Program-made: the position numbers and the translations under genes
Source of the DNA: Botryllus schlosseri
Lineage: Eukaryota
Assembly: GCA_051294905.1 (NCBI GenBank)
Contig: CM119381.1
Span: forward strand, 11,284,001 to 11,348,000
DNA length: 64,000 nt
Direction of reading: 5' to 3'
Part shown: piece after piece, positions 150-62,019 of the stretch
Layout of the letters: the number at the start of each line of letters is the position of its first letter
Numbering within the stretch: the stretch's first letter is position 1
The notes under the pieces: model-generated
Databases searched by the model: none
What the model saw: only the letters and a program-made list of their open reading frames with translations
Told to the model about the DNA's origin: nothing

Positions 150-268
150 CAAAAACTGTTGAAGTAGAAGTAGTATGGAAAAAGAACTACTTGATTAAGT
201 GAAACAAATAGATAAAACCTGCTTGAGTACTACAGAAAAGTAGAAGTGCTTCACTACTGACGACCTCT
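150..268 (+). mobile_element. Terminal fragment of the same AGTAG-rich family as 27357-28622
   Basis: ...cttgagtactacagaaaagtagaagtgcttcactactgacgacctct resembles ...cttgagtacttcaaaaaagtagaggtactccgttactgaccacctct at 28575-28621. Confidence 0.6.
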
Positions 269-388
269 AGCTTTTAGGGGGTCGATGAGTAAGAAAAGTT
301 TGGGAGCCGCTGATCATAATGCCACAGAAAACATTCCCATAAACACCGAACACGATTGTACTTTTCGCAAATAGTAATAGTACTTTAC

Positions 389-785
389 CACTGGATGGAT
401 CTTCAATGATATTAACAGTCACAAGAAGTTCGGGATCATTCATAGCATCAGTGAGCGATCCAGTGACATTTTCAACACTTTCGTCGTCATCAATGGGAAC
501 CTTCACTATTGACTGAATTTCATCTTCGCCTGTAAGAATTATTAACTTGCTGATACTTTAATATAACCAGAATCTGCACAAGGCAAGAATTACCAGGTTC
601 AAATACCAATTCCTCCTCGATTGGTTCTGCCTTTTCATCTGGAGTATCGTTTAGTCGGTACGGTTTAATGATTGAATCGACAGGTGTCTTCTTTGTTGTG
701 TCGCCGTGACGACCAAGAGTGATGTTTAAGATGACAGTGTCGTTATCTTCAACGTACGACAAATCTTTGACATATACTTTGGTTC
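389..785 (-). CDS. Calx-beta-like 23, class N (594-785, 389-529); gene probably continues beyond the window start
   Basis: LGRHGDT..YRLNDTPD; ends in a phase-1 donor G|gtaaag like its paralogues. Confidence 0.83.
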
Positions 786-45700: not shown

Positions 45701-48700
45701 GACTCTATAACGGTATAGACCGGTTCCAGCGATATGATTCTTAAGATCTTCGTGTAAGCCGTAAACATGGAGATTATAAATAAGTAGCCTATATACGATA
45801 TACATACACTGGTGCTTACTAGTTACAGTGATTTGTAAGAAACGAAAAAAGAAAAACAACAACAAAGATCACAGGGAATGACTTGATGCAATCGTAGATA
45901 CATCCTATTAGTATTTACTGATAAGTCAAGGAACGCTGCCTTAAATGACGAAAAACTCATACTTTTCAGTCGCAAGGGCAACTTATCCCACACATCAATT
46001 CCAGAACATTTCAAGGGAGGTAAAGCATTGTCGGAATTCGACATAAATAAGTTAAAAGAGCTCTTAGATCGAGTACCATAGCTGTGTATATGCATATGAG
46101 CACTGTATATTGCATTCACCGGTTTAGTTTTGTTGTTTTTGCCTCTGTGAATAACTAGCTTTGAGCCCATTTTTCCTTGAAAACTTCATGTGAACTTTTT
46201 GCACATCTCAAAAGTTAGTGATGTCACAGACTTGCTACTACTGGTGAATAGAGTAATAAGACAACGTTGCTGCTAGACCATTATAATTTCGAATATGAAC
46301 ATGTTCAGCCTTAGGTGCTTTACGGAATTGTCTACTCCGAAGTATCTTTCAACTTTTGATAGGAATGTGCTGGAAAATACAGGCATTTCTTTATTTACAA
46401 AAGATTACATTGCGGGCTGGATGAATTCGTCCGGCGGTCCGGATGTCTGACATGCCGCGCATGCAATAAACGTATAATGAATGAGCCCAGATACTATTTT
46501 AGGGCACATTCTCTATCATAAATGAAGTGGCATTTTTACAACTTATTTCTGATCAATGTACAAATATTGTAGTGTAAAAGCTCATTGCAAATTTATATAA
46601 ATGTATTTACCATAGAAAACTAAGAGAGAAAAAGACAAATGGTACAAAATGGTAAATTCTAACTTGAGCTGCAGATGAAGGGCCAGCCAAGCATGAATCT
46701 GTGACACAATCCTGGTAAAAGTCAACTGGATCGACATTGTCTTTGCAGCAATCTTCTTCTGCAAGTGGATTGCAGATCAGCTTTCTAAAGACAAAAATAT
46801 CATATAGTAAGAACAGTTTAAGTAAAGAAAGACAAAATATAAGACTCAACTCACGATATATGTGATGCTATAGGTTTGCATTCTGCATCATTCATGGTCA
46901 TAAGGTTGTCGGGACAATTTCCGATAAGAAATTGATTGCCGTAAGTCTCAAAGTCGGAAATGTCCTTTTTGTCAACCGCTTCAAATTCGTTCTTGTCATT
47001 GCCGTCAAAGTTACCGCACATACATCCAACCTGTGATCGAATGTTAAAATAATTGAAGTAATGGAGTAATGGAAAAGAGAATGAACACAATGATTTATTT
47101 TTTAAAAATGATTCAAAATTTCCAACCTAACCTTGCTGAATCTTAACAGGGTTGTAATGACTCGAGTCATTTTCTCAAAATACCGAAAATGACGCGGCTC
47201 GACCTGAGTCAATCTATGTATTGAGTCGACTTTTAATCGGGTCATTGCGCATGACACGGACCAAGTCATTTGACTTGAGACTCGTATGGCCAAGACCAAC
47301 ATTTCATTATAATTTCAAAGAATATTTAAGTTACCTCGCTATTGCTATTTCGTCTATTAGTACTGGTACTTGAAAGGGCGACCATATAAACTGTTAAAAA
47401 TGAGGAAATTAGTATATTTTGAATGTGAAGCATTTGATATCATTACGCAGAGTTGTAAAGAGTGGGTGTAACATAACTTCAACTCCAAACAGAACAGTCA
47501 ACACAATGACTTGGACTGACACTCGAGTCTGAACACTATGACTCGGACTCGACCCTCTGCTCGCCGACTTGACTAGGTGGTGAATTGAAAAACTGGACTT
47601 GACTCGAGTCAAAACTATAAAAGTCAGATTGACTGGTAACTCAGAGCTTTGTGACTTGGTTACAACCCTACCCTGTAAATCTATACTTCTACTTCTACTT
47701 GAGAAGTACTCGCAGCATTAAGTATGTCCGTAAAAAGCTCAATAAATTTATACTCACTTTCTCTTGGTATTTCGACGGAAGTGTGACCCATATATCTCCA
47801 TTTTTTAGTTCTGTTCGTAGGCCCCCTGCAATTTCCAACACCGAGGACAAGCCTACTCTTCTAACGCTGATATTGTCGGTATCAAATAAAGAGACTTCCT
47901 GTCCGTTGACCTGCAAATAAATCAAGCAGAAAATTCTTCATACCGTACATAATCGCTGTACGAATCAAGTGTTTCATACTAAATATGATGTGATGGTCAA
48001 AGTTAGTGACATAGGCGATGAGCCTGTGAATGATAGGTGTTCATCGCCTACCTTGTGTTGCGGATATGCGGCATATCCGCAATTTCGTCATCAGCACATT
48101 CTTGCTGGCTAAGTGTGTGGTTCGAAAAAATGGATCACTATGTATTTCGCAAAAAGTACTGATGTCTATGAGCAAACCACAATATACAGATGTAGCCTAA
48201 GATGTTCAAATGTGCATCACTAATTACTAAGCGACGCGACAGGATAAACATGCAACCTTGGAGTCGTCGGTTTTCACACACACGCGGCGCGCTGAGAGAC
48301 ATCATCTTCTCTCTCTATTAGAAGGAGGAAATACACGCTTCTATGAATCATTTACATTCGTAAGCTCCGCAAGCCGCGTTCAAAATAATTCTTGACTGAT
48401 TTTGGCGATAGTCTTTTTAATCGGAGCGAGAAATTGGATGGTGCGTTATTGTGTAAGCCCGCGAATTGCAAATTATTCCTGCACGGAATCGTTTACTCCA
48501 ATACCGGCTGCTTAGCAAACGTTAATTTGGAAATGCAGCATTGCAGCTCCGCGCCGTTATAATCTGCAAACAATTGACGCTATACGAGCACAATTCGGTG
48601 TCAGAACCCCATCGTGTTGAAGGTTAATTACTGATTGGACGCGCGCTTTCTCGTAGTAATCATCTGATTCGTGTATAAATTCTGCTTGCTACACTCGTAT

Positions 48701-51700
48701 TCCCGAATTATAGCGCAATATCACTTGTCAGAGTTGATCGCCGCGGCACGGGCTAGTAACGCAGTTACACTCGAATGCTCGCACCATTTCAAGATTAAAG
48801 GCGGAGATCATAAAGGTAGCGGATCCAGGAGAATGCTAATTGCGTGATTAAAAACTGCTAATCGGGACGCATTTTAGGCGGAGATCAAAAAGTCAGATGA
48901 TCAGGAAGATTGCTAATCGCGTGATTAAAAACCTGCTAATCGCGACGCAGAAAGTTGAATAAATAGCACCCATGGCACATGAAACCAGGACCTCTCAGAC
49001 TTATATCGCGGTATAAATCGAAAACAACATTTTAATCCAAATTTCGCATGCACGTAGTAACGTATAGGAAGGTAGGCCTATGAACGCAGGGTTTATGACC
49101 GCGATATAGTTCTGAGTTAGGTTCCGTTTTCGTGTACCACCCTTTTCGGACCTTTGGGAGTGAACACACGTTGAGTGTGTAGTTTTGTTCAAGCCTTATC
49201 AGTTGTCATTGTTACATTACGAATTACACGATATGATATTTCAGATTGTTGCATGCTACGTTTCCAAATCTCTATTAATCTAATTCGTAAAACAAGTCAT
49301 TCATTCTACATGATTACTGATTAGTAGGGCTGGGCAAAATAGAGTACCTGAGTGATTCGATTCTGAATCATGTATTATGCTTCGAGTCGAGTCGAGTATT
49401 CGAATATCACTCATTATGACATCACACCAGATTCTACTACGTCAAAGTTCAAATATGTACCTTTTATGCCGCCACAAAGAATAAAATGCCTGTTATCCGT
49501 CACATCAAAGATAACTTGTTATTTTTTCAATTGTTGTTGTTGTTGACAATGTTGTGGGATGATCATGACGTCAGAAATGTGTTATTTCCAGTGACATTCG
49601 TAGCTTTTACTATGTCTCGCATGCTGGGACACGGCCAATCAAAGTTTCAAGGCTTCCTCAGTGGAAAATAGTATCAAAACTATAATTCTCGTTAGTAAAT
49701 TAACTTTCAGTTGCGAGTAGCGTATAATTTCAGTACTCGAAACAATCGTCTTTTACTACTCCACTCAAATCATTAAAATTAATACTCGAATCAGATCGAG
49801 TACTCGAATCATTGTGCCCAGCCCTAATGATTAGCAAGCATCATCACCTATAAACAATGAACGGACGCGCCAAAGGCGAAAATGTCAAGATGATATGGTG
49901 CACTAAATATTTGTTAACTGAAGTCAGACTTGAAATAGCCTTTCTGGTTTGTGGTGGGCAGGTCGCGGAGTTTAAGAAGTATAATTAAGTCGGCATTATA
50001 CCCAAAACACGTAGAGAGACTCTCGGCTTCCGCTGAGGGCAGCCGAATTTCGGAAACCAGCCAGAGAAGCTAGCAAAACAACAATTTTATCATATTTTAT
50101 CAAGCTGCACACTGACTAGGATGCAGCGACCAAGAGAAGCTTTGTAATATTTCAAACACATTTTGGTTTACTAATAGAAAAACGTGTCTCGCCGTTATTG
50201 TGATTTAAAAAGACTAGAAAATGTTTTGTGTTACCATTATTCGGAATAATGACGCTGAATAAATATTATTCAGTCTAATTTAATGCTCACTTTCACATTA
50301 CAGCAGCTTGTATTGACAATCTAATTCACTGTTTTCAATTGACAAATAAAATGAATACGCTGCAGAATATAGTTTAAACTTTTGGCTCGGCCCATCAGCA
50401 TATTTTTCGCTTCTCCGTAAAAATAATTGCCCACCCCTTCATAATAATCGGTGATACCAATTAGTGTTAAATCAGGTTTTGAATCTCCATATTATGGCTG
50501 ATGGTATACTTAGTACTTACATGTGTCAACTAGAAATAGAAAGTGAACGATTGACTATTTACTTACAATTAGTTTGCCGTCGTAACTCAACTCGACTTGA
50601 ATAACTTCACCTCCTCCAACTTCAATCCTAAGAGATCTGACAGCCTTAAAAAAATATTATTAAAACCTCAAGTAGAACACTCGAAATTTTTGTATTTACT
50701 TGACTGGGGTCTTTTTCAGATAACCCCATTATGACTTCGATGTTGAAATATTCAGAATCTGTGGGCTGGTACTCAATTGTTTTAGCCAGACAGAAGCTAC
50801 ATTTTCCTTTATAAATGAATTGCTTGAGCTTTTTCAAAATTCGGTCACTTGCTGCGTCGCTTTTGTATTCCACAATCCCGCCCATGTCGAATGTGCTGAA
50901 ATGGTTCAATCCCCAAACTCTACATGTTCCGTAACCTGTTATTGAAAAACACGTTTTTGTATACCATACAAGCTACTGCTGATAATTTCTATGAGGGAAT
51001 GAAATATTACATAAATATTACTATAATGGCCTTCAAAGTATAAGTAATAAATTCTATATAAATCATAGTCCCGCAAATGTTAAAGTATTGGATTCTACAT
51101 TCACCTTTGAAAAATTGTATTTAATATGTATCAATATAATATACAGACAGGCAGGCAGGCAAACAAACATACAATTAACTTATTGTTTAAAAATATACAA
51201 ATACACATATCATAATGTTATGCCACAGTCGTCCAAATACCAGATAAAGATACATCAGTCTTACGGGCAAATTTAGATTTTCAGTTTGCCCTTAACTACT
51301 TGGCTTTTCGGGCCAGGACTAGGCCTGGCGATGATGACTTTTATATTATTTCAATGGTATATTCCTCTTTATATTGCCCTACCACTTGATATCGTGAATT
51401 CTGTGACTGGCCATAGTATGAATATCTGTGAGTGCGGCGTTAATGGCACCTTATTGCGCTTGACAGTCTCGATTAGAGGACGCACGTGACTTGCCAATTG
51501 TAGATATCACTTAAATAACGACAGGGTCTTATAAATCAGTGCGTCTCAATCGGTTGGTCGCGAATCTATTTCAGGTGGGTCGCGAAGACGTTTTAAATGT
51601 TACATTTTCGTATTCAATTTTCCAAATATTCCAAACACTTTAACACTTTATATTCTCAAGATTAGAAGTGTAAATGCACATGCACATTCGCGTCCTCCAA

Positions 51701-54700
51701 ATTGAATTGTTATGCGCCCGTAAGCGCCACAACCCACGTTGCCGTGCTCACAATAATTCGTAATCCAGATTTTCGTCACAGTCATATTGATTGGAGCGTG
51801 AAATGATTTTGATCGGGAAATGTAGCAATCCGGCCCGATTTGTCGTTATAATTAGATAACAATTGCCACAACGCAAGCATAGCTCTTTTGTGTTGGACGT
51901 AATAGACGAATTGCTGATTGCTGATTGTTGCGTGTGGTATTCATGGAGTTTTTCTACTTCACTTACACCAGGCCCATGTTTTTTACTATGAATCCGCATC
52001 TGACGGCTTGAATCGCGGTCCACTTCCAGACTTTTATAAAACGCCGCTTAAGCAGATCAGATGGCGAGGAGCCAAGATAAGCGTTTCACGTCTGTAATCA
52101 TCTGTCACATGCTAGACCTTACCTCACGCACCCCAACCCCCAATTGGTGCATCGAGCTCAAAGAGGGCCAAAAGAGCCAAAATCATCTCATGATTCAACA
52201 TAAATTATGGAGTATTTGTTTCGAGAATTATTGAACTTCTGTCAAATTTTCTTCGCGCCGGGCGCGATTTGACTTCGTTAGTTGTCTTGGTTTTAATAAA
52301 ATAATACGCATAATTTATATAAATAGGCATTTCGGTGTCTGCCATTACCGCGCCACGACATACCAAGACACATGAAATTTCAGTCAACATGTGACTTGGC
52401 GAAATGTGCTGGTAAAAAGAACGTCAGTGAGAAAACCTCGGCAGAAAAGGATCGAAAACGTCGGTACATATATGCCGAATTATCCATTGACTATAAGCGC
52501 CTGAATGGCTGTCTCGAAATATTGCCGTCGCCGAAAATTCATAATAGTATATGCAATTGACAATATCATTGACCGAATGCCATCATGAATTCAGAAAAAA
52601 TATTCACACCAGGCACTACCAGATAACTGTAATGCGGTGACAACATAACAACTGGCGCCGATGAGCAGGGGTTTAAAAGTTAGTCGCGAAAGGGCGTCTG
52701 GTGGGTCGCGAGAAATTTGGATGAAAATGGGTCGCGAACTGAAAGAGGTTGGGAAGCACTGTTATAAATAACCAATTGCTTTTTCGTGAATTTTCTTTAG
52801 ATAGCGAATAATGAATTTCTAAGTTGTAGTACAAATATCAACGACCTGTCATTGTTGTTTTGGTTGCTATTAGATTCTCTGATGCGCATTGAGAATGGCT
52901 GGATTAATTCGTATGGCTAGATCAATTCTATGAGTATTTGTAAATATGCCAACAGTTGTATAGGAACTTTTTAACAAACAAATTAATCTTATATTATGAT
53001 ACAATAAAGTCACTTCAGGAATAGACATGATTCTATCTTGTTAGATTGTTAAAACGCCTTTCACTCAATTCACACTGCATTTTTCGTAATGACCTATATT
53101 CACGAAGCTGCTTCAGCTCGCATGGCATACAAGACAAGCCATTATGACTCATTACTTTTTTATTAATGGATATTTTTTAACCGATAACATTATTATTATT
53201 AACAGAAACAAAAAATTAAGCAAGTCTCACTTTTTGGAGTACACTCAAGCACTCCTTTGTCCGTTGCCACACATATCTCATCTTCTTTACAGGTGCCATC
53301 AACACAATTCAACTTTCCTCCAGAACAAGTGCAGTGTTGCTTACAATTTTCCTTATAAAACGAGTCTCCACTCTAGAAATATTCATCAGCAGTTGAGGTA
53401 GGTCTACTTAGTATTACAGTATTAGTTATCCAACTCCAATACGAAGCATGTACTTGTACACTGACACAAAGGTTGTATACGCAGAGGTGTGACATTACAT
53501 ATAACTGCTGCATATTCATGGAAAGTCCTGACGGGATGAACAAATTGCGATGGACCATTATTCTGAATTTGAGCAGGAATCTGGCAGAATCATTAGAAAT
53601 CGACGAATTGTGGCTGTCCTTTTAAATCAATATCTGGACAGTATTCTGAATGTTTGCTTCCAATTTGTGTCTTTTAGTCTGGATTTGAAGACTCAGTACC
53701 ACATTGATTGACTCGAATCATTAATACCACGTGGAAACTTAATTGGTGGATACCCAAATTGATCAAGTAAACATTCTTAGGACTCTTGAACAAAGGCACT
53801 AAAACAGGATGTGATTACGAGAACGATTACGATTCCATTCAATGTTGGACAGATTGGATTTGTGTTCTCACAAATAATAATCCATTGGACTCAACAAATA
53901 TCGAGAACCTCAATACACCAGATATTATCAATACTATTATCTACATAGCCAGCTGTACTCAAATACGCATATGCAATACTTCCAGTATAATATGAATTTT
54001 CCGTCTCGAACCTTATAATATTTTCCGCCTGACGTGCACCCACATTCACTCCTTTTGACGCAGTCATCGTCAGATCTATAGAATCCATCCATACACATGC
54101 ACCCTGTAACAAACAACAGAGATGACATATCGATGGCCAACATTTTTTACTTGGCATGGTTACCTTCGGCGCATGTTCCAACGTTTATACAGGTAGTGGG
54201 AGAATCAGGATTGGAACAATCACTTTCACATTCGCTGATACAAGGTGTGTAGAAGGAATTGGGCGGGCAAGCCGGAACTAAACAAATATATTTCATAATA
54301 GAAAGCATCAATTAAAATTAAATTATCATGTCAAATATCCTTACAAAGTTTGCATTTCGTCCTCCAGTCACACAGGTTTAAAACGCCTGAAGATTCACAA
54401 GCCTGGGCATAAGCCACAATATTTGATTCGAGAGCTGCTTGATTTCCTTCAAAGTGGCACAGGTCAAATTTGCAATTCTGAAATATCAAAATACATGCAA
54501 ATCATTAAATTATGTGTAATATAATGTTTTATTATTAGTAACTTGACTAAAACAATCTCATGTAAGGTTTATAATCCATGACTATTAAGTGAATCTCCGT
54601 ATCTCTGTTTCGCCACCAAATACATTCATATTACATGTATTGATAGCTGGTAGTTTGGTAAGTGGCGGTTCACAACCTATGGCTTGAAACCCAATGTTGG

Positions 54701-57700
54701 GTCGCCTGGTATCATGGGATGATGATGACTTGCATGATCAACACAGTATATTTTTGATGAAGTAGTTTATATTGAGCAAACCAGACATATCAGAGCAAAC
54801 TAATATGGTAGAGATTTGAGCTGTACTAATTGAAATGATTAGATCCATTTTCTGGCATCAATTGAGTCAACTATGCCTCTGCTGAATCAATACCATTAAC
54901 TTCAATTAAAATTACCGCAAGACAAAAGGTAGGCTATGGGGAGTACCTCTTGCTGAAACGCGTCTCTTCATTCTTGTCATTCAACCATCTTTATGCATTA
55001 TTTCAGTATATCTCGTTCAGTGCGCATCCCTTACTTTAACATGATCTTCCATTTTTTGCTATTTATGGGACTAGACAAGTGGATCGTAACCTATTTTTCT
55101 CCAGCGCCCCCTTTCAAAAATTGCCCGAGTCTGGCGCCCCCCTATTTCAAGGACTGTAGTAAAAACAATGGGTAAGTGAGTGGTTGAACTCCGCTTTTGG
55201 GTTGGGACTTCACTATTAGACCACTCGACTAATTAACGGTATAATTGTATGTGCTATCTTCGGGATCACATCCCGGTTATAGTTATAACAACCATCGAGT
55301 TAGGCCTACGGGCGGGGTCATAGCATTTGGTTCGAGATCGATGTACACATCCCGACTTCTCCTCAACGATTGGCAATGCGGGGAAGTTAATTGTATTGGG
55401 TTTTGTTTTATTGCTTTGTGTGACTACTAAATCAACTGAGAATTTCGGCCGAATAGCATCAAAACATCTTTAATGCGCAAAGGACATCACTCTCAAAAGT
55501 TGTACAGTAGCCAACAGTGCCTTTTCGATTTCGACACGCAGTGAGCTGCAGGATATAATATAGTTCATTACATTTTGTGGAAAATAACCCGAGCTGTCAG
55601 TATAAGTATCAGTTTATTATTGTTTTCATCATTTCAAAACAGCACAAAACTGCGATACAATGAAAGGATAGTAAGGTGCGGTCGAAACGACTTGGAGTAG
55701 CTAACGTGCAGGGAGTGTTATAACGGGGAATTGACAATCCAAAAGTAAACTAAATTCATTTTACATGAATTGAAATAAACCACTGTGTTCATGGAAACAT
55801 GGTGGGTAGATATTTCGCGATGAGCGCAACGAAAAATGTTGTGATTTGACAGATTTTGTTGAATATTAGTTTGCAATGAGAACTCAGGGATATATAGAAC
55901 TACTGATTTACTATATAATCAGATGTCCTTAGTACACCATCTACTGTTAGGCCATTTTTCTTCAGCGCCACCCATACGGCCCCCTGAGCCCAGCGCCCCC
56001 CATTTCGCCACCTGAGCGTTTCCCCCTTCAAAATTCAAATCGCCCCCTGCGGGGCGCTGGAGACAAGGTTAAGAACCACCGGACTAGACGGATGACACTG
56101 ATAGGAAGCAGTCAAAAAGATTTGGTGAAGTCAACAATCAAACACCATTTCTGCCCCATCAATAGCAAGAAGCGAAGAAACGTTGGGAAATGAGTCGGGA
56201 AGTGGCAGATGATTCTTTCGACAACATATCTTACGTGTCCCCTACCCCAAAGAGCAGGGGTGGCCAACCTGCGGCCGTAGAAGCATAAATGATCGGCCGT
56301 CTACAGGTAATTCAATTAGCGTGTGTTGGCGGCCTTCAACATGACAATTTATGAAACATTTTAATTCAACGTAAAATTCTTCTTCGCGTTTCTTGGGCTT
56401 CAGAACGACTTGGATTTTTGATTTTAATATAGAGCCTTTGTACGTTTGGGCGATTCCAATATATTTTTACTATACCTACAATCCTATTAGGAGGTCAAAA
56501 AATAACAGCATGAAACAAAGTTATAATAACAATGATGGGTTCAGCCGAAGATGCATCATTATTATTTAGTTGCCCTATGTATTCGATGACACCCCTTCCA
56601 TCAGCTCTACCGGTAAATCTGGTCACATGAGCGAAGAAAGGACAAATATTTGATAATAATACGTGAAACTATCAATATTATTGACGAAATTCATTCATGA
56701 ATATGACAAATTTTCGTAATATGCGCGACCAGACCACGATACACTGTACCTTTTCATAGCATTAATACTCGCGATTTCGGTGCGAACGGAAAGCCTGCTG
56801 GGGATTTCTTATTCTACAATTAAAAACGTTCGTACGCAAAGTATTTCTCGAGAAAACTTGGCGCATGTGTCTATGGCAATGAGGTGTATATTATATTCCT
56901 AACGTTTAATACCCTAGAGAACCCTGTCGGTTATATGTCGAACTTCGGGAAGTCTAAATTTCCCCGGAGTCACAATACAAGAATCTACCACATCGGCAGT
57001 GATTACGGATTAGGCAATGGTAGAAAATATGCTCACTAGCGTCATATTCAATCTATGATGTGTCGTGGTGCAGCAGTACATCGATCAAACTTACTGATCT
57101 CAACGAAAATAACTAATAATCAAAGTGATACATCATACCTCGTAGAACAAATCTGGATTGATTCGTTTATGACAAGCAGAAAAACAACCATTAGGTCTTT
57201 TAATGACTTCGCAATTACATTCGCCTGTGTCAAAATCTCTGTCTTCGCATTTCTTCGACTTAGCGTTGTCCTTGCATCTGCAATTGTAATGGCAATGCTG
57301 ATAGGTTCGCAAACTGTTATGGCCTATTAATAGTCACCGTTCATCAACGGTTACTAAATATTAGAATAAAAAGATCACGAGCACACTGGCTTCAACGATT
57401 CCGCCTTTGACGTGCCTAGATAAAAGTAGGCGGCGTTTTGACGCTACTAAATTGGCGTCAACATGAAACACTCTGCTTTCGTCAGAATCGAGAGCTAATA
57501 ACTTGGTATACAATTCGATCAAATGCATAAAACGATTCAATTTACCCAGGCTTCGCTCCTCCGACTTTGTAAATGTAACCGAATTCGTTGGCTGAGAGGC
57601 CTTTCATGTCGTCGTCTGCTATTCCATTATAATCACCGCAGATTCCTACACGAAACACATTTCGAGCTAGATACATACGGGATATATCTATAGTGGATAT

Positions 57701-60482
57701 CGAAGCGACGCACCTTCAACGCAGTTCATGTAGGTAGGCGGAAGATATACATCAAGATTAAAATTCCCATTGAACTTTAAATCCACGTGGAACTTGGTTG
57801 TCACATAGAAGAACCTGCCCCGTCGTTTGATGGTGAGACCGCTCGGCTCGTGCAGGTATGGAAGATTGACAAGCACTTTATCAACCTGAGTTGCGCAGGA
57901 TAATTACGTCAGAACATTATAAGTCCTTAATTTGAGAATTCGATCTTACCAGAAAATGTCCGCCTTTTCGAATTTCAATTTCTATGCCATGGACACGCAC
58001 AAGAGCTCTCTCAAGCCATGAAATTCCAGGTTTTCCTCGTTCGTTGTTCTCGACCTAATATTCATGGAAATTATCAGCTTCGGCATCAATAAGTCGTTAT
58101 TAATAAACTCCGCCGTGAGTCTACAATCGTAAGCTGGTAGAGGCCTCCGACAGCGGCAAAATAGTCAGGTAGAGCCAAGCTTAGACCCCTGTATCATTGT
58201 AGCGTGGCGATCATAATTAGATCGTCCGAAGAACCAAATCTAACAATCGTCAGATGGCGGGTATAGTGAAAAAGCCCAGTACTGTGACGCATATTAGCCT
58301 CGCGATACGTATTGAACAATTACTCGATATCATTTGTATACCGTAGCACAGCCTCGCTTCGCACTGACACTACAATCTAATACGTGGCTACTCATTTGGG
58401 AAGTTTAGCTCTCTTCTATTTTTGTATATGTTATATATATAATGTACCATTTTATATGCATTGGGCATAGGCATGCGATCTCTAATCGCCAGGCTTGTTT
58501 GCGCACTTAGAGAATCCTGAATCGCGTGTCATTAGGCAATTAGGCATACGATTTGCGCTGTAATAGTTGTGTTTTACTTTACCGGCATTTAAAACTCACC
58601 AGTACTTCGATGGAAGTCAGATTTGGACAAATCACGTTGACCAGTTGGTACATGCAAGTCCCCATGAAATCGATTGCCTTGTTGTCAAACGTCAGGTAAT
58701 GTGGATCGCCACGGGCCACGCATTTTGCTTTTACTCTCTTATCTGCAACATAGTACATTCAAGATATATAAACGCATTCGATATGTTTCAAACGAGTCAG
58801 ACGAGATGATATACTTACGACATCTTCTCCCAGAGAATCCAGGCGGACAAGCACAGCTCGTATCACCGTTCGCCAATTCCATACAGGTTCCCCCGTTTTT
58901 ACATTTATTCCTAAGGAAGCATTTAGTAGCTTCGCGGAAAACAACAGAAGTGTTAATATTTGTTATTAGTTTCTCCATAATGAATACGAAATAACTGTAC
59001 CTTGCTCGCACAGGGTCCCCTTGGTACCTTCCTTACAAATACATTCGAAATTCTTTTTTCCTATTGCGATACATGTTCCGTCGTTTTTGCAAGGGTCTTC
59101 GTAGCACGCGTTGAAGTCTAGAAACCAGGCCAAATAAGTGTAGCGGTTTCACGAATTTTATGGACATAATGCTCCTATTTTCAGTCGAGAGATAACATAA
59201 CATGGTCTTTAACGGTCAATAGGACTGGGAACAATGATTCGAGAACTCGAATGCGAATACAATATTAATTCTGTTGTTTGGAGTTGATTTTACAGTACTG
59301 ATATTAAACCCTCCTTTCCACTGACTAAGATCACTTCCCACCGTTGCAACCTTAAAACCTCGATAGGTCGGATGAAAACACTCAAAACATATATAGGCCC
59401 AGTAGTAGCGTTACCACATTTTGAGATCTGAAATTGAGGATACTTTTCAAATACTCTGAAAGCTCCAGCACCGAACAAGAAAACTGGTCATTTTGAAAAC
59501 GATAATAAAAAATAGGTCATCACTTCGATTCGACTCCCGAATTACTCGCTTTTTTACAATTATGTGTAGTGTTGTCTTAAAAAAGATCATCAAATTGGCT
59601 CGGCTACCGTTTTAGCCGATTTTTCACGAATGTCTGACGTTCGCGACGTCGGGGTTCAGTTTTGGATCGAATTTTAGTAGTTTTTCTAGAAAAAGAGGAC
59701 AAAGTCCCAAAAAATAGGGTAATTAGGCGTCCTCCAAGAACATTTTCAATTTTTTTTTTAAAGAGAACTTAAAACTCATAACAGCGGACGTAAGGTAACC
59801 CTAAGCCTACAAAGCTTCGCACATTGGTAGAAATGAAATTTCTGCAAAGTCGTGTCCAACCCACATAGCGTTGCTGTACGTGTGATGAAATGGCCAATTA
59901 TCGATTATGTGGTGTAGAATGGGCATTGTATTCTTTGTGATCGCATAAAAGGTATAGATTTGAAATTTCCACTTCATCCGCTCTTTACGATATCATATTG
60001 AGTAATAATCGTATGCTCGTATCGAATCGAAGCCCACTATTCGATTCGGAATCAGACACGAATGGACGTTCATCTGAACGCTACACCAATCGCATTGATG
60101 TAACAAAATTGACCTCAGACACTAACTTACTTATTTGGCATGCGAACGGAGCTTTTCGTCTGCAATTTTTCGTCCTCATAGATCCGGTCATCGCCATAGC
60201 TCCACATTCCCTAGACCTCATCGGCTGGCGTCTTTTCCAGTTCACGAAGCTGAGGTTCGACAGCTTTCCGTCCGACCAGTAATAATCATCTTTGTCTATT
60301 TTGTCAATTCCTGTGTTTATAGACGGATATTTCATTATGGATTGTGTATTCATGATAGCGTGAGTAGTCCATCACAAACCTATTTGCAGTTGACCTTCCA
60401 GTTGGTCCCTGCGACTAGGATCGGCTCTTACAACAGCGTCCATCAAATTCACCATGAATTGGACAGCTTTCTTGCTCTTTAT
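389..60482 (-). CDS. Giant multi-exon secreted/extracellular mosaic protein (CTLD-EGF-VWD/C8/TIL-VWA-cbEGF-WxxW-Calx-beta x>=23); FCGBP/zonadhesin/mucin-like head plus Calx-beta stalk; partial at both ends
   Basis: 103 exons traced by hand with AG acceptors and GT donors (two GC donors). Cumulative phases stay in frame throughout (17,674 nt, ~5,890 aa). Domain calls come from recognisable motifs, not a database search. Confidence 0.9.
849..1352 (-). CDS. Calx-beta 22, class E (1155-1352, 849-1016)
   Basis: VEFEKDSYTVME; IMNDEIYENPEVFTLEL. Confidence 0.9.
2031..2858 (-). CDS. Calx-beta 21, class S (2667-2858, 2031-2195)
   Basis: KPKYETSE..RLLTKPDTADESDF; KDNLPEDEERFVVYL. Confidence 0.88.
3471..4232 (-). 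CDS. Calx-beta-like 20, class N (4041-4232, 3471-3617)
   Basis: LGRHGDT..YKLNDSPD. Confidence 0.83.
4297..5313 (-). CDS. Calx-beta 19, class E (5116-5313, 4297-4464)
   Basis: VEFEKDNYTVIE; ITNDEVYEKPETFTMEL. Confidence 0.9.
5676..6251 (-). CDS. Calx-beta 18, class S (6060-6251, 5676-5843)
   Basis: PEPKYETSE..RLLTKPDTADESDF; KDNLPEDEESFIIYL. Confidence 0.88.
6808..7260 (+). mobile_element. tRNA-derived SINE-like element, different body; 3' limit approximate
   Basis: A box TAGCGTAGTGG (6815-6825), B box GGTTCGAGTCC (6859-6869). Confidence 0.6.
7422..7813 (-). CDS. Calx-beta-like 17, class N (7628-7813, 7422-7568)
   Basis: LGRKGDT..RLNDSP. Confidence 0.83.
7873..8744 (-). CDS. Calx-beta 16, class E (8547-8744, 7873-8040)
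   Basis: VEFADDSFEVIE..GSAESPGDF; DNIKEEPEKFTVEL. Confidence 0.88.
9287..10142 (-). CDS. Calx-beta-like 15, divergent class N (9951-10142, 9287-9430)
   Basis: YFIKDV..TITVGRK..ASFEPG; 192/144-bp phase-1 exons. Confidence 0.72.
10724..11146 (-). CDS. Calx-beta 14, class S (10955-11146, 10724-10888)
   Basis: KEPKY..TKPDTADDTDF; ENAEEFIVFL. Confidence 0.87.
11731..12331 (-). CDS. Calx-beta 13, class D (12134-12331, 11731-11907)
   Basis: YTVAETEG..RTGDLS; IITDDLGEDDETFLVLL. Confidence 0.9.
12388..13308 (-). CDS. Calx-beta-like 12, class Q (13126-13308, 12388-12540)
   Basis: VKLEFTVIRDG..VQFVEG. Confidence 0.8.
13369..14260 (-). CDS. Calx-beta-like 11, class N (14069-14260, 13369-13515)
   Basis: GRKGDI..YKLNDSPD. 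Confidence 0.83.
14318..15185 (-). CDS. Calx-beta 10, class E (14988-15185, 14318-14485)
   Basis: IVNDDTNEEPESFTVEL. Confidence 0.9.
15257..16080. mobile_element. TIR-bounded element with a telomere-like G-rich core (unclassified)
   Basis: Inverted ends cggcacttggtgaattcggccc / gggccgaattaaccaagtcccg; internal imperfect repeats rich in TAGGGTT/GGGGGAG (about 15635-15930). Confidence 0.7.
16376..16993 (-). CDS. Calx-beta 9, class D (16796-16993, 16376-16552)
   Basis: IVDDDIDEDDETFIVML. Confidence 0.9.
17059..18079 (-). CDS. Calx-beta-like 8, class Q (17897-18079, 17059-17211)
   Basis: IKLEFTVVREG..VQFVEG; paralogous to 13126-13308/12388-12540. Confidence 0.8.
18135..19086 (-). CDS. Calx-beta-like 7, class N (18895-19086 with GC donor, 18135-18281)
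   Basis: GRKGDI..YRLNDSPD; paralogous to 14069-14260/13369-13515. Confidence 0.83.
19150..19796 (-). CDS. Calx-beta 6, class E (19602-19796, 19150-19317; GC donor)
   Basis: Class E motifs; first exon is 3 nt shorter than its paralogues. Confidence 0.87.
20157..20746 (-). CDS. Calx-beta 5, class D (20549-20746, 20157-20333)
   Basis: Near-identical to Calx-beta 3. Confidence 0.9.
20827..21620 (-). CDS. Calx-beta 4, class E (21423-21620, 20827-20994)
   Basis: Near-identical to Calx-beta 2. Confidence 0.9.
21941..21998. repeat. Perfect 29-bp tandem duplication
   Basis: caacccctttaattgggtaactaacaagc x2; single copy in the paralogous intron near 20111. Confidence 0.9.
22014..22624 (-). CDS. Calx-beta 3, class D (22427-22624, 22014-22190)
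   Basis: YTVAESDG..RTGDLS; IIDNDIDEDDETFMVML. Confidence 0.9.
22705..23326 (-). CDS. Calx-beta 2, class E (23129-23326, 22705-22872)
   Basis: VEFEKEVYTVLE..GSATSPEDF; IVNDESEEEPESFTVQL. Confidence 0.9.
24221..24641 (-). CDS. Calx-beta 1, class S (24450-24641, 24221-24385)
   Basis: KDPKY..RLLTRPDTA..DF; ITNDEEDEVTEQFILYL. Confidence 0.88.
25041..25824 (-). CDS. Two mucin-type WxxW domains (25705-25824, 25465-25641, 25253-25398, 25041-25188)
   Basis: HWTEWFN...GDFE...C.DYEMQLCC and IWTEWFNIDK..GGDNE...GFVCEN...CLDYEVRYCC. Confidence 0.9.
26224..29055 (-). CDS. TILa-like module plus four calcium-binding EGF domains (28660-29055, 26403-26525, 26224-26346)
   Basis: EVDEC..CIDTKESYEC; DINEC..CKNLVGGFEC; DINEC..CENTYSSYRC; EINEC..CENTDGGYEC. 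Confidence 0.9.
26641..27214. mobile_element. hAT/Charlie-like MITE
   Basis: TIRs CAGTGGTTTTCAACC / GGTTGAGAACCACTG; no TSD match; related sequence near 61440-61520. Confidence 0.65.
27357..28622. mobile_element. Non-autonomous hAT-type element with AGTAG/ACTACT-rich subtermini, 1,266 bp
   Basis: TIRs CAGAGGTG / CACCTCTG; TSD gtcaatag / atcaatag (7/8). Confidence 0.75.
29576..30942 (-). CDS. VWA domain 4, degenerate (30800-30942, 29824-30093, 29576-29768)
   Basis: LDVVLILQSDD...FHIGEDQVQIASFSY...RRIGVPGVTLLVT...IVVVAL. Confidence 0.82.
31001..31300 (-). CDS. EGF plus calcium-binding EGF (31187-31300, 31001-31126)
   Basis: [41 protein letters not shown]. Confidence 0.9.
32105..34385 (-). 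CDS. VWA domain 3 plus Cys-rich TILa-like module (34243-34385, 32787-33276, 32105-32257)
   Basis: NLIVVIDSCLTM...RSDVPAVTVFLTAG...LVVVGIG; PDCKIECTC. Confidence 0.85.
33602..33975 (+). mobile_element. tRNA-derived SINE
   Basis: A box TAGTGTAGTGG (33610-33620), B box GGTTCGATTCC (33653-33663), ~300-bp body, AATAAT-type tail; no tRNA cloverleaf. Confidence 0.7.
34442..35348 (-). CDS. VWA domain 2 plus Cys-rich TILa-like module (35206-35348, 34650-35145, 34442-34591)
   Basis: DLMIVLESSSSI...RLGNAL...RPGVPVAVLALADG...IVAVGI; KDCTEMCHC. Confidence 0.88.
35405..35503 (-). CDS. Acidic plus Thr/Pro-rich linker exon
   Basis: DETETEKNEDDGLDPFEPDPIATTTPVTPTAAP; 99 bp, phase 1-1, canonical sites. Confidence 0.75.
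35557..38865 (-). CDS. VWD4-C8-TIL-TILa-like (38585-38865, 38135-38290, 37428-37600, 36898-37057, 36594-36745, 36415-36536, 35557-35703)
   Basis: TCSAV..YSSFDG; VGCLCGNNND; GPFSKCH; YAESC..IPDWRE; CVCNNGYVLDDERCIPIEDCGC. Confidence 0.88.
38924..41417 (-). CDS. VWD3-C8-TIL-TILa-like (41275-41417, 40755-40859, 40458-40629, 40295-40394, 40093-40234, 39621-39747, 39443-39553, 39126-39217, 38924-39065)
   Basis: RGNMHYQSFDGKEFSFKGTCSY; GLAGNYNGNPDDD; FSICHSSVDPAPYFGDCEFDAC; exon sizes mirror the VWD1 module. Confidence 0.9.
41481..42680 (-). CDS. VWA domain 1, MIDAS intact (42512-42680, 41481-41884)
   Basis: DLVLVVDGSSSM...GGSNTGKA...LLITD...IIVIGIG. Confidence 0.9.
43412..43928. mobile_element. 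hAT-type MITE rich in GACTCGAGTC motifs
   Basis: TIRs CAGGGTTGTAA / TTACAACCCTG; TSD attcctac / attcctgc (7/8). Confidence 0.8.
44139..50935 (-). CDS. VWD2-C8-TIL-TILa-like (50700-50935, 50567-50644, 47758-47910, 46855-47030, 46664-46784, 45070-45230, 44139-44404)
   Basis: TCRVWGLNHFSTFD; VGCMCGNFDG; CCKDNVDPVDFYQDCVTDSC; YATEC..TCDW; CVCSFGFVKEGDQCVKLEDCGC. Confidence 0.88.
45900..46170 (-). mobile_element. 5'-truncated LINE (CR1/L2-like) ORF2 C-terminal remnant
   Basis: IHSYGTRSK...GIDVWDKLPLRLKSMSFSSFKAAFL fits the H.Y.TR...G..LWN.LP..LK...S...FK pattern of non-LTR ORF2 C-termini. Confidence 0.6.
47147..47670. mobile_element. Second copy of the GACTCGAGTC MITE, opposite orientation to 43412-43928
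   Basis: Termini cagggttgtaatgactcgagtc ... gtgacttggttacaacccta; no clean TSD. Confidence 0.75.
49325..49826. mobile_element. hAT-type MITE, ~500 bp
   Basis: TIRs TAGGGCTGGGCA / TGCCCAGCCCTA; TSD ctgattag / atgattag (7/8); a related terminus (taggactgggaacaatgattcgag) lies at 59221. Confidence 0.8.
51537..52761. mobile_element. Non-autonomous hAT-type DNA transposon, 1,225 bp
   Basis: TIRs CAGTGCGTCTCAA / TTGGGAAGCACTG; perfect 8-bp TSD TTATAAAT (51529-51536 and 52762-52769). Confidence 0.85.
53231..58742 (-). CDS. VWD1-C8-TIL-TILa-like (58600-58742, 57950-58054, 57714-57885, 57546-57645, 57139-57277, 54345-54477, 54164-54277, 54012-54103, 53231-53372)
   Basis: KCVARGDPHYLTFD...FMGTCMYQL; GICGDYNG; FSACHKRINPDLFYENCKFDLC; CPPNSFYTPCISECESDC. 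Confidence 0.9.
55077..56081. mobile_element. Non-autonomous hAT-type element, ~1 kb
   Basis: Imperfect TIRs (aagtggatcgtaacct..ctccagcgcccc / ggggcgctggag..aggttaagaaccaccg) flanked by the 8-bp direct repeat GACTAGAC. Confidence 0.75.
58819..59117 (-). CDS. Two EGF-like domains (59001-59117, 58819-58929)
   Basis: CYEDPCKNDGTC...FECICKEGTKGTLC and CFLRNKCKNGGTC...CACPPGFSGRRC; phase-1 exons. Confidence 0.9.
60131..60482 (-). CDS. C-type lectin-like domain, C-terminal two exons (60380-60482, 60131-60310)
   Basis: IKSKKAVQFMVNLM...LQIGIDKIDKDDYYWSDGKLSNLSFVNWKRRQPMRSRECGAM...KNCRRKAPFACQ fits the CTLD WIG/W-DG/NW/C..C pattern. Confidence 0.8.
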
Positions 60483-62019
60483 CTGTAAACAGAACAGATA
60501 CATGATATGATTACTCCTGTACGACCCAGATGATCAATTTATTTAAATAGCTCTTCTTTACATGAGAGTAGCAATATTTATACCATGTCAAACAGACGGC
60601 CCGCGAGCTGCACCCGGCTCGCGTAGCTATACTGATTGAAAAATGCTTGTATTGTTGAGATTTTTAGTAAGCAACACTTCTATTAAATATTTCCTCAAAT
60701 CAGCATCTGATTTCGAACATTGTTCATAGGCCACATTATGCCCATCAGACGGCCTTGTTGCTGTTCCACTCTAGTCGCCATTAGGAACAAATCGCTGATA
60801 TTGAAACCAAATTCCGAGTATGCAAATACGTGCACACTGAGTTTGAAGTTTTATGGAAAATTGGAACAAAAGTAGTTATTCACAGAAGCGAAAACGCCGA
60901 TGCGAAACCATTATTACAAGTTTCATACACAATATCACAGTTCGCGAAGAATCCGTGGTCGCGCTGCTGTTTAACTTCTGACGCAGAAGATCTGCTGCCT
61001 CCAGTGATCCCCGAATTGTGATTCAATTATAATGACGCAAATCCCAACGTCCGGGTTTACAGTTCAATCTTTTGTATTCTTCACAATTAATGCATAGGGC
61101 TAACGCCAAATTACGAATAAAACAAAGGGAGTATGGAAATATGCCAACTGATATCGTCGTTAGAGCCACTATTTGAGCCGTTAAGAACTGTATTCAATCG
61201 ACAACCATGAATTCCGTTGCTTGCGAGTATAGGTGTTGCTTCAGTAAGCTCTATGATTCGTAATATACGATTATGTATAGACTTGACAATATAGTATTCA
61301 ATAAAAATCAAGGGTATGGATTTTAGAGGCAACAGTTTGGAATCATTTAAATAGTCCGGCCCGCAAGCGATCCGACCTGCGGCAAAAGTTGAGTTTGACA
61401 TCCCTGTTTTAGACCATGGCGTCCGCTAGACTAGAGGTCCTAAATTGCCGGTCCGTGATAACTTTCCGGCCGGTCCGCTAAATATATTTCAATTTTATTC
61501 CCAATTGCCAAATGTGAGAGGTCGAAGGCTTGTCTTATGCTTAACAACCTTACAGTGATTTAGAAATTTGAAACGTAGTTCTAAACGCTAAAAATTACAT
61601 ATATTATATAAATCAGAACATTTGTCTTCGCGCCACCGTAAGTATATATACCAATAATACCATCCACATGACGTTACAGCCTCCAGAGTCAAATTCCTAA
61701 TTAAATGACGGCATGACAGCAAGGATTGTCAGAGAGCATGTATACGTGAATTAGATTAGAAGGCGACGAGTCGTTCAATTGCAGACTCTGGCTTAGTACC
61801 ATGCAGTTCCACTATCAGCACGACAGAGCCGAGAAACGCTTCACAACAATTGAGGGGAGCGAGTCACAAATAAAAACAGTCAGGTGCTTTTTCACTTGGA
61901 TTTGTGTTGTCTTTTACATCCACCAGGTCTCGATGGATATATCACGACATGAGTTTGTTGAAATCTTTTGACCCCTTCCTATCTATCAACTGCATCTCCC
62001 ACTTTTTAATTGTGTGTAG

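What the first reader, a model, noticed from the sequence alone, without database searches (positions are those of the whole stretch)
389..60482. Giant FCGBP/mucin-like head fused to a >=23-domain Calx-beta stalk: candidate undescribed adhesive or matrix protein
Seen: one continuous frame of ~5,890 aa joins CTLD, EGFs, four VWD-C8-TIL units, four VWA, cbEGFs, two WxxW and at least 23 Calx-beta domains. Established: VWD-C8-TIL and WxxW are polymerisation modules of VWF, gel-forming mucins and FCGBP; long Calx-beta arrays occur in ADGRV1/VLGR1 and FREM proteins. I do not recall this full combination. Inference: a secreted polymer-forming protein in which a Ca2+-stiffened, strongly acidic Calx-beta rod replaces the O-glycosylated PTS region of mucins (mucus net, tunic, egg coat or bioadhesive).
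Basis: partly seen in the sequence, partly recalled or inferred. Interest (0 to 1): 0.88.

Follow-up and report, generated by a model that had tools for sequence, protein, structure and literature searches.

The report
Giant mucin-headed Calx-beta matrix gene
This stretch holds the front part of one enormous animal gene, probably from a sea squirt, that joins a mucus-protein-like cross-linking head to a long acidic chain of 23 calcium-binding beads; I found no description of this combination, and what it does is still unknown.

Summary
On the minus strand, 103 exons (60482 to 389) join into one open frame of 5,871 aa with no stop. Of the 103 exon donors, 101 are GT and 2 are GC. The frame is open at both window ends.

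Head, about 3,150 aa:
- a partial C-type lectin domain and EGFs
- four FCGBP-like VWD-C8-TIL-TILa assemblies, the first with a GDPH motif
- four VWA domains and five calcium-binding EGFs
- two mucin CysD (WxxW) domains

Stalk, 2,723 aa: 23 Calx-beta units, each encoded by two phase-1 exons. It has pI 4.05 and only 2 cysteines.

Evidence that head and stalk are one gene:
- A 10-kb contig from another sample (L001) is collinear across the head-stalk junction, with conserved acceptors and phases. Its pN/pS against the window is 0.25.
- Neither species has a stalk start codon with a signal peptide.

RNA confirmation failed: the runs I laid had essentially no reads. The N-terminus, and so secretion, was not found.

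Literature searches found no description of this combination. The nearest analogues are sponge aggregation factors, scallop byssal EGF/Calx-beta proteins and FCGBP. I rate it a new variant of a known kind: a real, constrained gene whose function is only inferred. Earlier scan notes report that the same gene continues downstream.

The parts
60131..60482 (-). Partial C-type lectin domain in two exons (60380-60482 and 60131-60310). The N-terminal half and the signal peptide are missing from the window.
   Evidence: Pfam Lectin_C, E 2.2e-5, profile positions 44-106. The splice sites were read. No upstream lectin or signal-peptide exon was found in 60483-64000.
58819..59117 (-). Two EGF exons (59001-59117 and 58819-58929), both phase 1-1.
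   Evidence: Pfam EGF, E 4.6e-8 and 3e-9.
53231..58742 (-). D1 assembly, VWD-C8-TIL-TILa, in 9 exons. It carries a GDPH motif at the start of the VWD domain.
   Evidence: Pfam VWD, C8 and TIL. The first exon matches FCGBP VWD domains, including GDPHY, at E 1.2e-50. D1 is 35% identical to D3 over 373 aa.
44139..50935 (-). D2 assembly, VWD-C8-TIL-TILa, divergent, in 7 exons.
   Evidence: Pfam gives VWD weakly (0.037), C8 0.003, TIL 0.012 and TILa 3.6e-5. The TIL-TILa exon matches FCGBP 8rde at E 2.3e-18. D2 aligns with D4 at E 1e-38.
41481..42680 (-). VWA1 in two exons. All MIDAS residues are present (DGSSS, then T, then D).
   Evidence: Pfam VWA, E 4.9e-12 and 9.7e-19. The motif was read from the translations.
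38924..41417 (-). D3 assembly, VWD-C8-TIL-TILa, in 9 exons.
   Evidence: Pfam VWD 6.3e-7 and 5.3e-10, C8 6.7e-7, TIL 6.2e-5, TILa 6.6e-8.
35557..38865 (-). D4 assembly, VWD-C8-TIL-TILa, divergent, in 7 exons.
   Evidence: Pfam gives VWD weakly (0.038), C8 2e-5 and TIL 1.2e-4. D4 aligns with D2 at E 1e-38.
35405..35503 (-). A 33-aa acidic, Pro/Thr-rich linker exon. This is the only PTS-like stretch in the window.
   Evidence: Translation.
32105..35348 (-). VWA2, TILa, VWA3, TILa.
   Evidence: Pfam TILa 7.1e-4 and 9.8e-5. The VWA2 exon finds multi-VWA proteins and a 92%-identical ORF from another sample, P0005.
26224..31300 (-). EGF, calcium-binding EGF, VWA4 (3 exons), TILa plus two calcium-binding EGFs, then two more calcium-binding EGFs.
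   Evidence: Pfam EGF_CA, EGF_3, TILa and VWA. Every exon matches L001 end to end.
25041..25824 (-). Two mucin-type CysD (WxxW) domains, two exons each: 25705-25824 with 25465-25641, and 25253-25398 with 25041-25188.
   Evidence: Pfam Mucin2_WxxW, E 2.8e-18 and 1.3e-7. Solved-structure matches to MUC5AC and MUC5B CysD. The internal 66-nt intron was shown by L001.
24642..25040 (-). Head-stalk junction intron, 399 nt, GT-AG, phase 1.
   Evidence: The phase is conserved in L001. The two polyA-like hexamers at 24661 and 24668 are no more than the intron average of 1.6 per kb, and L001's junction intron has none.
389..24641 (-). Array of 23 Calx-beta units (46 exons, each unit a first-half plus a second-half exon, all phase 1-1), 2,723 aa. 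The array continues beyond window position 1.
   Evidence: Alignments A1 and A2. Pfam counts. Solved-structure profile matches to NCX1/CALX calcium-binding domains in register. Paralogue pN/pS 0.33. Unit types.
18895..19317 (-). Two consecutive exons whose donors are GC instead of GT (exon ends at 19150 and 18895).

Best explanation
The window holds the N-terminal ~5,900 residues of one very large extracellular matrix, mucus or adhesive glycoprotein gene of an animal. Earlier scan notes call the genome a sea squirt; I did not check that.

Shown:
- A cysteine-rich head of four FCGBP-type VWD-C8-TIL-TILa assemblies. D1 carries the GDPH self-cleavage motif.
- Four VWA domains; VWA1 has all MIDAS residues.
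- Five calcium-binding EGFs and two mucin CysD domains.
- The head is spliced in phase to a nearly cysteine-free, highly acidic array of 23 Calx-beta domains.
- The gene is under purifying selection, and its head-stalk order is kept in a second, deeply diverged copy.

Inferred from what these modules do in VWF, gel-forming mucins, FCGBP, Na/Ca exchangers and sponge aggregation factor:
- The D assemblies and CysD domains link molecules covalently and non-covalently into multimers or networks.
- The VWA, lectin and EGF modules bind matrix or glycan partners.
- The Calx-beta array acts as a long, negatively charged, Ca2+-dependent spacer or rod. In seawater calcium it would be extended and able to bridge to other molecules.

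Because every stalk exon is symmetric (phase 1-1), unit number can change by duplication, and possibly by exon skipping. The unit order does differ between the two copies compared.
For: One open frame:
- 103 exons and 5,871 aa with no stop; 101 GT and 2 GC donors, every acceptor AG.

Domain identities:
- Pfam on exon pieces.
- Solved-structure matches: FCGBP 2.3e-18 and 1.2e-50, MUC5AC/MUC5B CysD, NCX/CALX Calx-beta in register.
- In one search the profile's acidic cluster aligns with the DDDIFEEDENF segment of NCX1 CBD1. That this segment holds Ca2+ ligands is my recollection, not a tool result.
- The four D assemblies are paralogous.

Composition:
- Stalk pI 4.05, 23.5% Asp+Glu, 2 cysteines, 48 N-glycosylation sequons.
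- Head has 224 cysteines.

Constraint:
- Paralogous stalk exons have pN/pS 0.33. Exons are 88-92% identical against 64-85% for their introns.
- L001 against the window has pS 0.85 and pN 0.21.

Head and stalk as one unit:
- L001 is collinear from the EGF exon through VWA4, the calcium-binding EGFs and two CysD domains into Calx-beta units.
- Every exon matches end to end and all acceptor AGs are kept.
- The last head exon runs phase 0 to 1 and the first Calx exon starts in phase 1, in both copies.
- The first stalk exon has no Met, and no in-frame start with a signal peptide lies upstream.
Against: - There is no RNA support. Three bulk RNA-seq runs, sampled at 6-13% of their reads, gave essentially no reads on 21900-27800. 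The only contigs from a probable RNA run (X1) are unspliced and about 3% divergent.
- No spliced protein fragments of this gene exist in the protein collections searched.
- The N-terminus and signal peptide were not found, so secretion is assumed from the domain types.
- The C-terminus is outside the window, so a membrane anchor or a cystine knot cannot be excluded.
- Only D1 has GDPH. The VWF-type CGLC motif is absent: D2 and D4 have CMCG and CLCG instead.
- About nine Calx-beta units are divergent and lack part of the acidic cluster.
- L001 could be a paralogue rather than an orthologue. Its organism is unknown.
Confidence: 0.6

Rival explanations
1. Head and stalk are separate products. One possibility is two adjacent genes arranged as a tunicate-style operon. 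The other is a head-only isoform made by reading through the donor at 25041 and polyadenylating just before 24641.
For: - Read-through of the 25041 donor adds 16 residues and then a stop.
- ATTAAA and AATAAA lie at 24668 and 24661, 20-27 nt upstream of the acceptor at 24642.
- Tunicate operons place the polyA signal right next to the trans-splice acceptor of the downstream gene. This is my own recollection and was not checked here.
- No RNA data contradict this reading.
Against: - The first stalk exon has no Met. The first in-frame Met, at the start of exon 24221-24376, lies in the middle of a Calx-beta domain and has no signal peptide.
- PolyA-like hexamers occur in 39 of 101 introns, at 1.6 per kb.
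- L001's junction intron has none, yet it keeps the same phases and order.
Confidence: 0.12
2. The protein is a cell-surface recognition or aggregation molecule, a functional counterpart of the sponge aggregation factor. A VWD-type self-associating part would be combined with Calx-beta arms, possibly anchored or bound to cells, and used for Ca2+-dependent cell-cell or self/non-self adhesion.
For: - The sponge MAFp3/p4 precursor has 29 Calx-beta domains and a wreath domain. The core of the wreath domain is predicted to be VWD-like, and the components have low pI (PMC11670116).
- Sponge aggregation factors also combine Calx-beta with VWA or VWD domains and are built from phase-1 exon modules (PMC5400394).
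- Unit order differs between the two copies compared, as would be expected of fast-evolving recognition arrays.
Against: - No wreath domain can be tested, because the C-terminus is outside the window.
- The domain order is reversed: here the head is N-terminal.
- The stalk shows purifying, not diversifying, selection.
- There are no polymorphism or expression data.
- Aggregation factors are reported only from demosponges.
Confidence: 0.15
3. The locus is a decaying or mis-assembled chimaera that does not encode a working protein.
For: - There is no RNA support.
- Two donors are GC rather than GT.
- The 5' end was not found.
Against: - 17.6 kb of spliced frame contains no stop.
- pN/pS is 0.25-0.33.
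- The same exon order and boundaries occur in an independent contig from another sample, L001, and a 92%-identical ORF occurs in a third sample, P0005.
Confidence: 0.03

Closest known systems
IgGFc-binding protein (FCGBP) and the D assemblies of gel-forming mucins and VWF
   Same: - Tandem VWD-C8-TIL-TILa(E) assemblies. FCGBP is the best solved-structure match for the exons tested.
- A GDPH motif in D1.
- Two CysD (WxxW) domains like those of MUC5AC, MUC5B and MUC2.
   Different: - Only four D assemblies, interleaved with four VWA domains.
- An N-terminal lectin domain and EGFs.
- No PTS domain in the window.
- No CGLC motif.
- A 2,723-aa Calx-beta array follows the CysD domains.
- The canonical sea-squirt mucin Ci-GFM1 (D1-D2-D'D3-D4-VWC-CK, 2,880 aa; PMC6109156) has a different architecture.
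Sponge aggregation factors (MAFp3/p4, AqAFs)
   Same: - Long extracellular Calx-beta arrays (13-29 domains) combined with VWA, VWD or VWD-like wreath domains.
- Acidic proteins with Ca2+-dependent assembly.
- Domains built from phase-1 exon modules (PMC5400394, PMC11670116).
   Different: - In aggregation factors the Calx-beta array comes first and the wreath domain is C-terminal. Here the VWD-rich head comes first.
- Aggregation-factor Calx-beta domains span three exons; here they span two.
- Aggregation factors lack C8-TIL, CysD and lectin domains.
- They are reported only from demosponges.
Scallop byssal 'EC proteins' (e.g. Sbp9)
   Same: Secreted fibre or adhesive proteins that mix Calx-beta domains with tandem EGF-like domains, proposed to use Ca2+ for self-assembly (PMC9168380). 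In the window, calcium-binding EGFs precede the array. Earlier scan notes, unchecked, say many more follow it.
   Different: EC proteins have only 1-5 Calx-beta domains set among EGFs, and they have no VWD, C8, TIL, CysD or VWA head. That paper regarded them as unique to scallops.
ADGRV1/VLGR1 and FRAS1/FREM proteins
   Same: Long extracellular Calx-beta arrays. FREM1 also has a C-type lectin domain. This comparison rests on my own knowledge and on the list of extracellular Calx-beta proteins in PMC11670116.
   Different: The window contains no GAIN/7TM region, EPTP repeats, CSPG repeats or furin repeats. Those proteins have no VWD assemblies.

Membership tests
FCGBP / VWF-mucin D-assembly proteins | Tandem VWD-C8-TIL(-E/TILa) assemblies | tested here: met
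   Pfam finds all parts. FCGBP is the best solved-structure match. The four assemblies are mutually alignable.
FCGBP / VWF-mucin D-assembly proteins | GDPH autocatalytic cleavage motif in the VWD domains | tested here: inconclusive
   The motif is present in D1 only (GDPHY, aligned to FCGBP's GDPHY). D2, D3 and D4 have GLNH, GNMH or nothing. Cleavage itself was not tested.
Gel-forming mucins | Long central Pro/Thr/Ser-rich O-glycosylated domain | tested here: not met
   Ser+Thr is 12.8% in the head and 15.6% in the stalk. The only PT-rich stretch is a 33-aa linker at 35405-35503. The part of the gene outside the window was not seen.
Gel-forming mucins / VWF | [quoted passage not shown] | tested here: inconclusive
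   CGLC is absent: the equivalent positions read ICGD, CMCG, LAGN and CLCG. The cystine knot cannot be tested because the C-terminus is outside the window.
Calx-beta domain family (PF03160) | About 110-125-aa unit matching the Calx-beta profile across both halves | tested here: met
   13 of 23 first halves and 14 of 23 second halves hit Pfam on their own. Profiles of both halves match NCX1/CALX calcium-binding domains in register, E 2.7e-11 and 5.5e-5. About nine units are divergent.
Calx-beta domain family (PF03160) | Acidic Ca2+-coordinating cluster (the DDD..E..E loop and the C-terminal acidic motif) | tested here: inconclusive
   The profile consensus aligns with DDDIFEEDENF of NCX1 CBD1. 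A simple pattern scan finds an acidic motif in 13 of 23 units. In units 3, 5, 8 and 9 the match lies outside that loop, although the unit alignment shows a DDD-type loop in units 3, 5 and 9. The C- and E-type units have a shortened loop. Binding was not measured.
Sponge aggregation factors | C-terminal Wreath domain | not testable with these tools
   The C-terminus lies outside the window and no Wreath model is available. The domain is reported only in demosponges.
Sponge aggregation factors | Calx-beta array with VWA or VWD domains, built from phase-1 modules | tested here: met
   All 46 stalk exons are phase 1-1, and VWA and VWD domains are present. However, each domain uses two exons, not three, and the domain order is reversed.
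ADGRV1 / FREM | GAIN-7TM (ADGRV1) or CSPG repeats (FREM) beside the Calx-beta array | tested here: not met
   No such Pfam hit was found on any exon piece scanned in the window. The downstream part of the gene was not seen.

The most novel reading that the evidence does not exclude
A chordate has independently built, or has retained, an aggregation-factor-like supramolecular material. In it, VWD and CysD cross-linking nodes carry long, acidic, Ca2+-loaded Calx-beta rods in the place where mucins carry glycosylated PTS bottle-brushes. This would be a protein-only, calcium-switchable alternative to mucin gels, used for the filter net, tunic, glue or cell and colony adhesion. Its rod length would be tunable through symmetric exons.
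Probability: 0.2. Interest if true: 0.8.

Novelty: new variant of a known kind. Interest (0 to 1): 0.58.

Why it matters
If the protein is made as predicted, it would be a third way of building large extracellular gels or fibres from old modules, alongside glycan-based mucins and the sponge aggregation factor. It also occurs in the invertebrate group closest to vertebrates. It would connect three separate literatures:
- mucin and FCGBP assembly
- the sponge aggregation factor, whose wreath domain was recently proposed to be VWD-like
- scallop byssal EGF/Calx-beta proteins

It would also give a natural calcium-dependent rod of tunable length for biomaterials work. If it turns out to be just one more giant mosaic matrix gene, it is still useful as an annotated example. 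The scan's own notes list several such genes in this genome.

Tried and rejected
1. RNA test of continuity. The single read-laying run, on 21900-27800 with runs X5, X7, X9 and X1, gave 7, 7 and 1 partial reads. It also gave unspliced X1 contigs about 3% divergent from the window. This is uninformative. A second run search on 32780-35350 found only small word shares in probable RNA runs, and no further read-laying was allowed.
2. Whole-library HMMER with the VWA2 exon. It found only generic multi-VWA proteins at about 28% identity and one 92%-identical genomic ORF, P0005. None of the 150 hits resembles the stalk. No annotated full-length protein could be recovered, so no architecture search over proteomes was possible. 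Spliced sequences cannot be handed to the tools.
3. Search for the 5' end. Pfam on upstream pieces, pattern scans of 60483-64000 and a homologue search with the lectin exon all found nothing.
4. P0005's contig could not be fetched because the sample file is too large.
5. Rfam, tRNA and tandem-repeat scans of the window showed nothing relevant.
6. My first gene models contained artefacts: filler micro-exons, a false exon at 27238-27338, and exons skipped because of the GC donors. I corrected these by hand. The early figures of 5,740 and 5,893 aa are superseded by 5,871 aa.
7. The operon or polyA reading of the junction was considered and judged unlikely; see the rival explanations.

Full report
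**Context**

The window is AT-rich (GC about 37%) and has no assembly gaps. All long stop-free pieces with recognisable protein motifs lie on the minus strand. Earlier notes of this scan call the genome an invertebrate chordate, and one follow-up calls it a sea squirt. I did not verify this. I use it only as context.

**Gene model**

- I built a small exon-chaining program trained on the window itself.
- I corrected its output by hand where it had used filler exons or had missed GC donors.
- The final model has 103 exons from 60482 down to 389 and encodes 5,871 aa with no in-frame stop.
- Of the 103 exon donors, 101 are GT and two are GC, on consecutive exons ending at 19150 and 18895. Every acceptor is AG.
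- The median intron is 243 nt. Exon GC is 42% and intron GC 35%.
- One apparent 389-nt exon is really two exons separated by a 66-nt stop-free intron (25399-25464). The related contig has a 56-nt intron with a stop at exactly that place, with the GT and AG conserved.

**Head, residues about 1-3,148 of the model**

Pfam scans of exon pieces and comparisons of the head's parts with one another give this order:
1. The C-terminal half of a C-type lectin domain.
2. Two EGF domains.
3. D1 and D2.
4. VWA1.
5. D3 and D4.
6. A 33-aa acidic Pro/Thr linker.
7. VWA2, then TILa.
8. VWA3, then TILa.
9. EGF, then a calcium-binding EGF.
10. VWA4.
11. TILa with two calcium-binding EGFs, then two more calcium-binding EGFs.
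12. Two CysD (WxxW) domains.

Details of the head:
- Each D unit is a VWD-C8-TIL-TILa assembly of 360-400 aa.
- D1 resembles D3 (35% identity, E 5e-86) and D2 resembles D4 (E 1e-38), so a D-D pair was duplicated.
- Among solved structures, the TIL-TILa exon of D2 matches only FCGBP (E 2.3e-18).
- The first exon of D1 matches six FCGBP VWD domains, including the GDPHY self-cleavage motif (E 1.2e-50).
- The CysD exon matches MUC5AC and MUC5B CysD domains.
- VWA1 has all MIDAS residues. The other VWA domains are partly or wholly degenerate at that site (translations).
- The head has 224 cysteines.

**Stalk**

- From 24641 to 389 there are 46 exons, all phase 1-1 and all multiples of three in length.
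- They alternate between a first-half exon (183-198 nt) and a second-half exon (141-177 nt), giving 23 units of 110-125 aa.
- On their own, 13 first halves and 14 second halves hit Pfam Calx-beta.
- A profile of all first halves matches residues 12-62 of the CALX and NCX1 calcium-binding domains (E 2.7e-11).
- A profile of all second halves matches the following residues, 65-130 (E 5.5e-5). It includes the segment DDDIFEEDENF of NCX1 CBD1.
- The units are therefore Calx-beta domains, about nine of them divergent.
- They fall into six recurring sequence types plus one odd unit (unit 15). The order is D' A B A B | A C E B | A C E B | D, the odd unit, | A C D | A C D | A C. This confirms the higher-order pattern that another note of the scan reported.
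- The stalk is 2,723 aa with pI 4.05, 23.5% Asp+Glu, two cysteines and 48 N-glycosylation sequons.

**Is it a working gene?**

- Paralogous stalk exons differ mostly at synonymous sites (pooled pS 0.51, pN 0.17, ratio 0.33).
- Young duplicate exons are 88-92% identical, while their introns are 64-85% identical.

**Are head and stalk one gene?**

It gave essentially no reads, only unspliced contigs about 3% divergent from the window. RNA evidence is therefore still missing.

Indirect evidence is good:
- A search with the CysD exon found one protein fragment, P0151, at 80% identity.
- Its 10.3-kb contig, L001, comes from another public sample.
- L001 is collinear with window 31300 to about 17900: EGF, calcium-binding EGF, three VWA4 exons, TILa with two calcium-binding EGFs, two more calcium-binding EGFs, four CysD exons, then Calx-beta units.
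- Every window exon up to the last CysD exon aligns from first to last, or nearly last, residue. An AG precedes each orthologous exon checked except the first.
- The last head exon is 148 nt in the window and 145 nt in L001, running phase 0 to 1 in both.
- The first Calx-beta exon starts in phase 1 after a good acceptor in both.
- Synonymous sites between the two copies are near saturation (pS 0.85) while pN is 0.21. The arrangement has therefore been kept over a long time.

Against a separate stalk gene:
- The first stalk exon has no Met.
- The frame just upstream is closed by a stop.
- The first Met lies in the middle of a Calx-beta domain.

The junction intron does carry ATTAAA and AATAAA 20-27 nt before the acceptor. 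Such hexamers occur in 39 of 101 introns, and L001's junction intron has none. A minor head-only isoform remains possible.

**Limits of the window**

- The lectin domain lacks its N-terminal half, and I found no signal peptide in 60483-64000.
- The stalk runs off position 1.
- Earlier notes of this scan, which I did not check, say the adjoining sequence continues the same chain with many more Calx-beta domains, about 69 calcium-binding EGFs and another VWD. They also report an RGD micro-exon 3.8 kb downstream and a 17-copy exon-plus-intron tandem array.
The scan has then seen the same gene before, in the neighbouring window.

**Array turnover**

In L001 the array starts A, C, E. This matches the window's A-C-E-B module (units 6-9 and 10-13), not its first five units. 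Unit number and order have therefore changed between the two copies.

**Comparison with what is known**

Full-text searches gave these results:
- Only the sponge aggregation-factor paper mentions Calx-beta, VWD and VWA together.
- No paper mentions Calx-beta with FCGBP, or Calx-beta with TIL and mucin.

The nearest analogues:
- Sponge aggregation factors combine 2-29 Calx-beta domains with VWA, VWD and a C-terminal wreath domain, and use phase-1 exon modules. The wreath core is now predicted to be VWD-like.
- Scallop byssal 'EC proteins' insert 1-5 Calx-beta domains among EGF repeats. That paper considered them unique to scallops.
- The canonical sea-squirt gel-forming mucin Ci-GFM1 has the usual D1-D2-D'D3-D4-VWC-CK plan and is different.

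The present protein shares modules and probably physical principles with all of these. It fits none as a member: there is no PTS domain, no CGLC motif and no testable wreath domain or cystine knot, and the domain order is reversed relative to aggregation factors.

**Verdict**

- The architecture is real, selectively maintained and, as far as I could search, undescribed.
- The functional reading, a secreted, multimerising, Ca2+-dependent matrix, mucus or adhesive protein, is reasonable but rests on inference from domain families.
- I class it as a new variant of a known kind. Interest is moderate to high, limited by the missing transcript, missing protein ends and missing expression site.

Noticed in passing
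window 18895-19317 (minus strand): Two consecutive stalk exons use GC instead of GT donors (AAG|GCACAA at 19150 and GAAG|GCATGT at 18895). Their paralogues all use GT. These could be weak sites that favour exon skipping, or recent mutations.
   Followed up: partly
window 25399-25464: A 66-nt intron that is stop-free and a multiple of three, so it reads as coding. It was recognised only because the related contig L001 has a 56-nt intron with a stop at the same place.
   Followed up: yes
window 27022-27800 (inside the 2.1-kb intron 26526-28659): The contigs of run X1 pile up here at very high word depth, up to about 6,000, with many loose ends. This is probably an abundant or expressed repeat or transposon inside the intron.
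   Followed up: no
L001:7302-9950 versus window 24641-11731: The Calx-beta array of the related copy begins with units of types A, C and E. The window begins D' A B A B before its A C E B modules. Unit number and order are therefore evolutionarily labile.
   Followed up: partly
window 24661-24668: ATTAAA and AATAAA lie 20-27 nt upstream of the acceptor of the first Calx-beta exon. Read-through of the preceding donor (25041) would give a stop after 16 codons. A head-only isoform is conceivable, but the hexamers are not conserved in L001.
   Followed up: partly
window 25105-25462: Contigs from the 2015 run X1, labelled as probable RNA, cover two short introns without splicing and differ from the window by about 3%. 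They look like genomic DNA or pre-mRNA of another haplotype.
   Followed up: no
window 61114-61425 and 23963-24196 (minus-strand frames): There are similar-looking open stretches with motifs such as 'GRIACGP' and 'AAHGSNVAREAIRCGP'. They are likely copies of a dispersed repeat, not exons.
   Followed up: no
window 48799-48949: A 77-bp unit is repeated 1.9 times at 85% match inside an intron of the D2 assembly.
   Followed up: no
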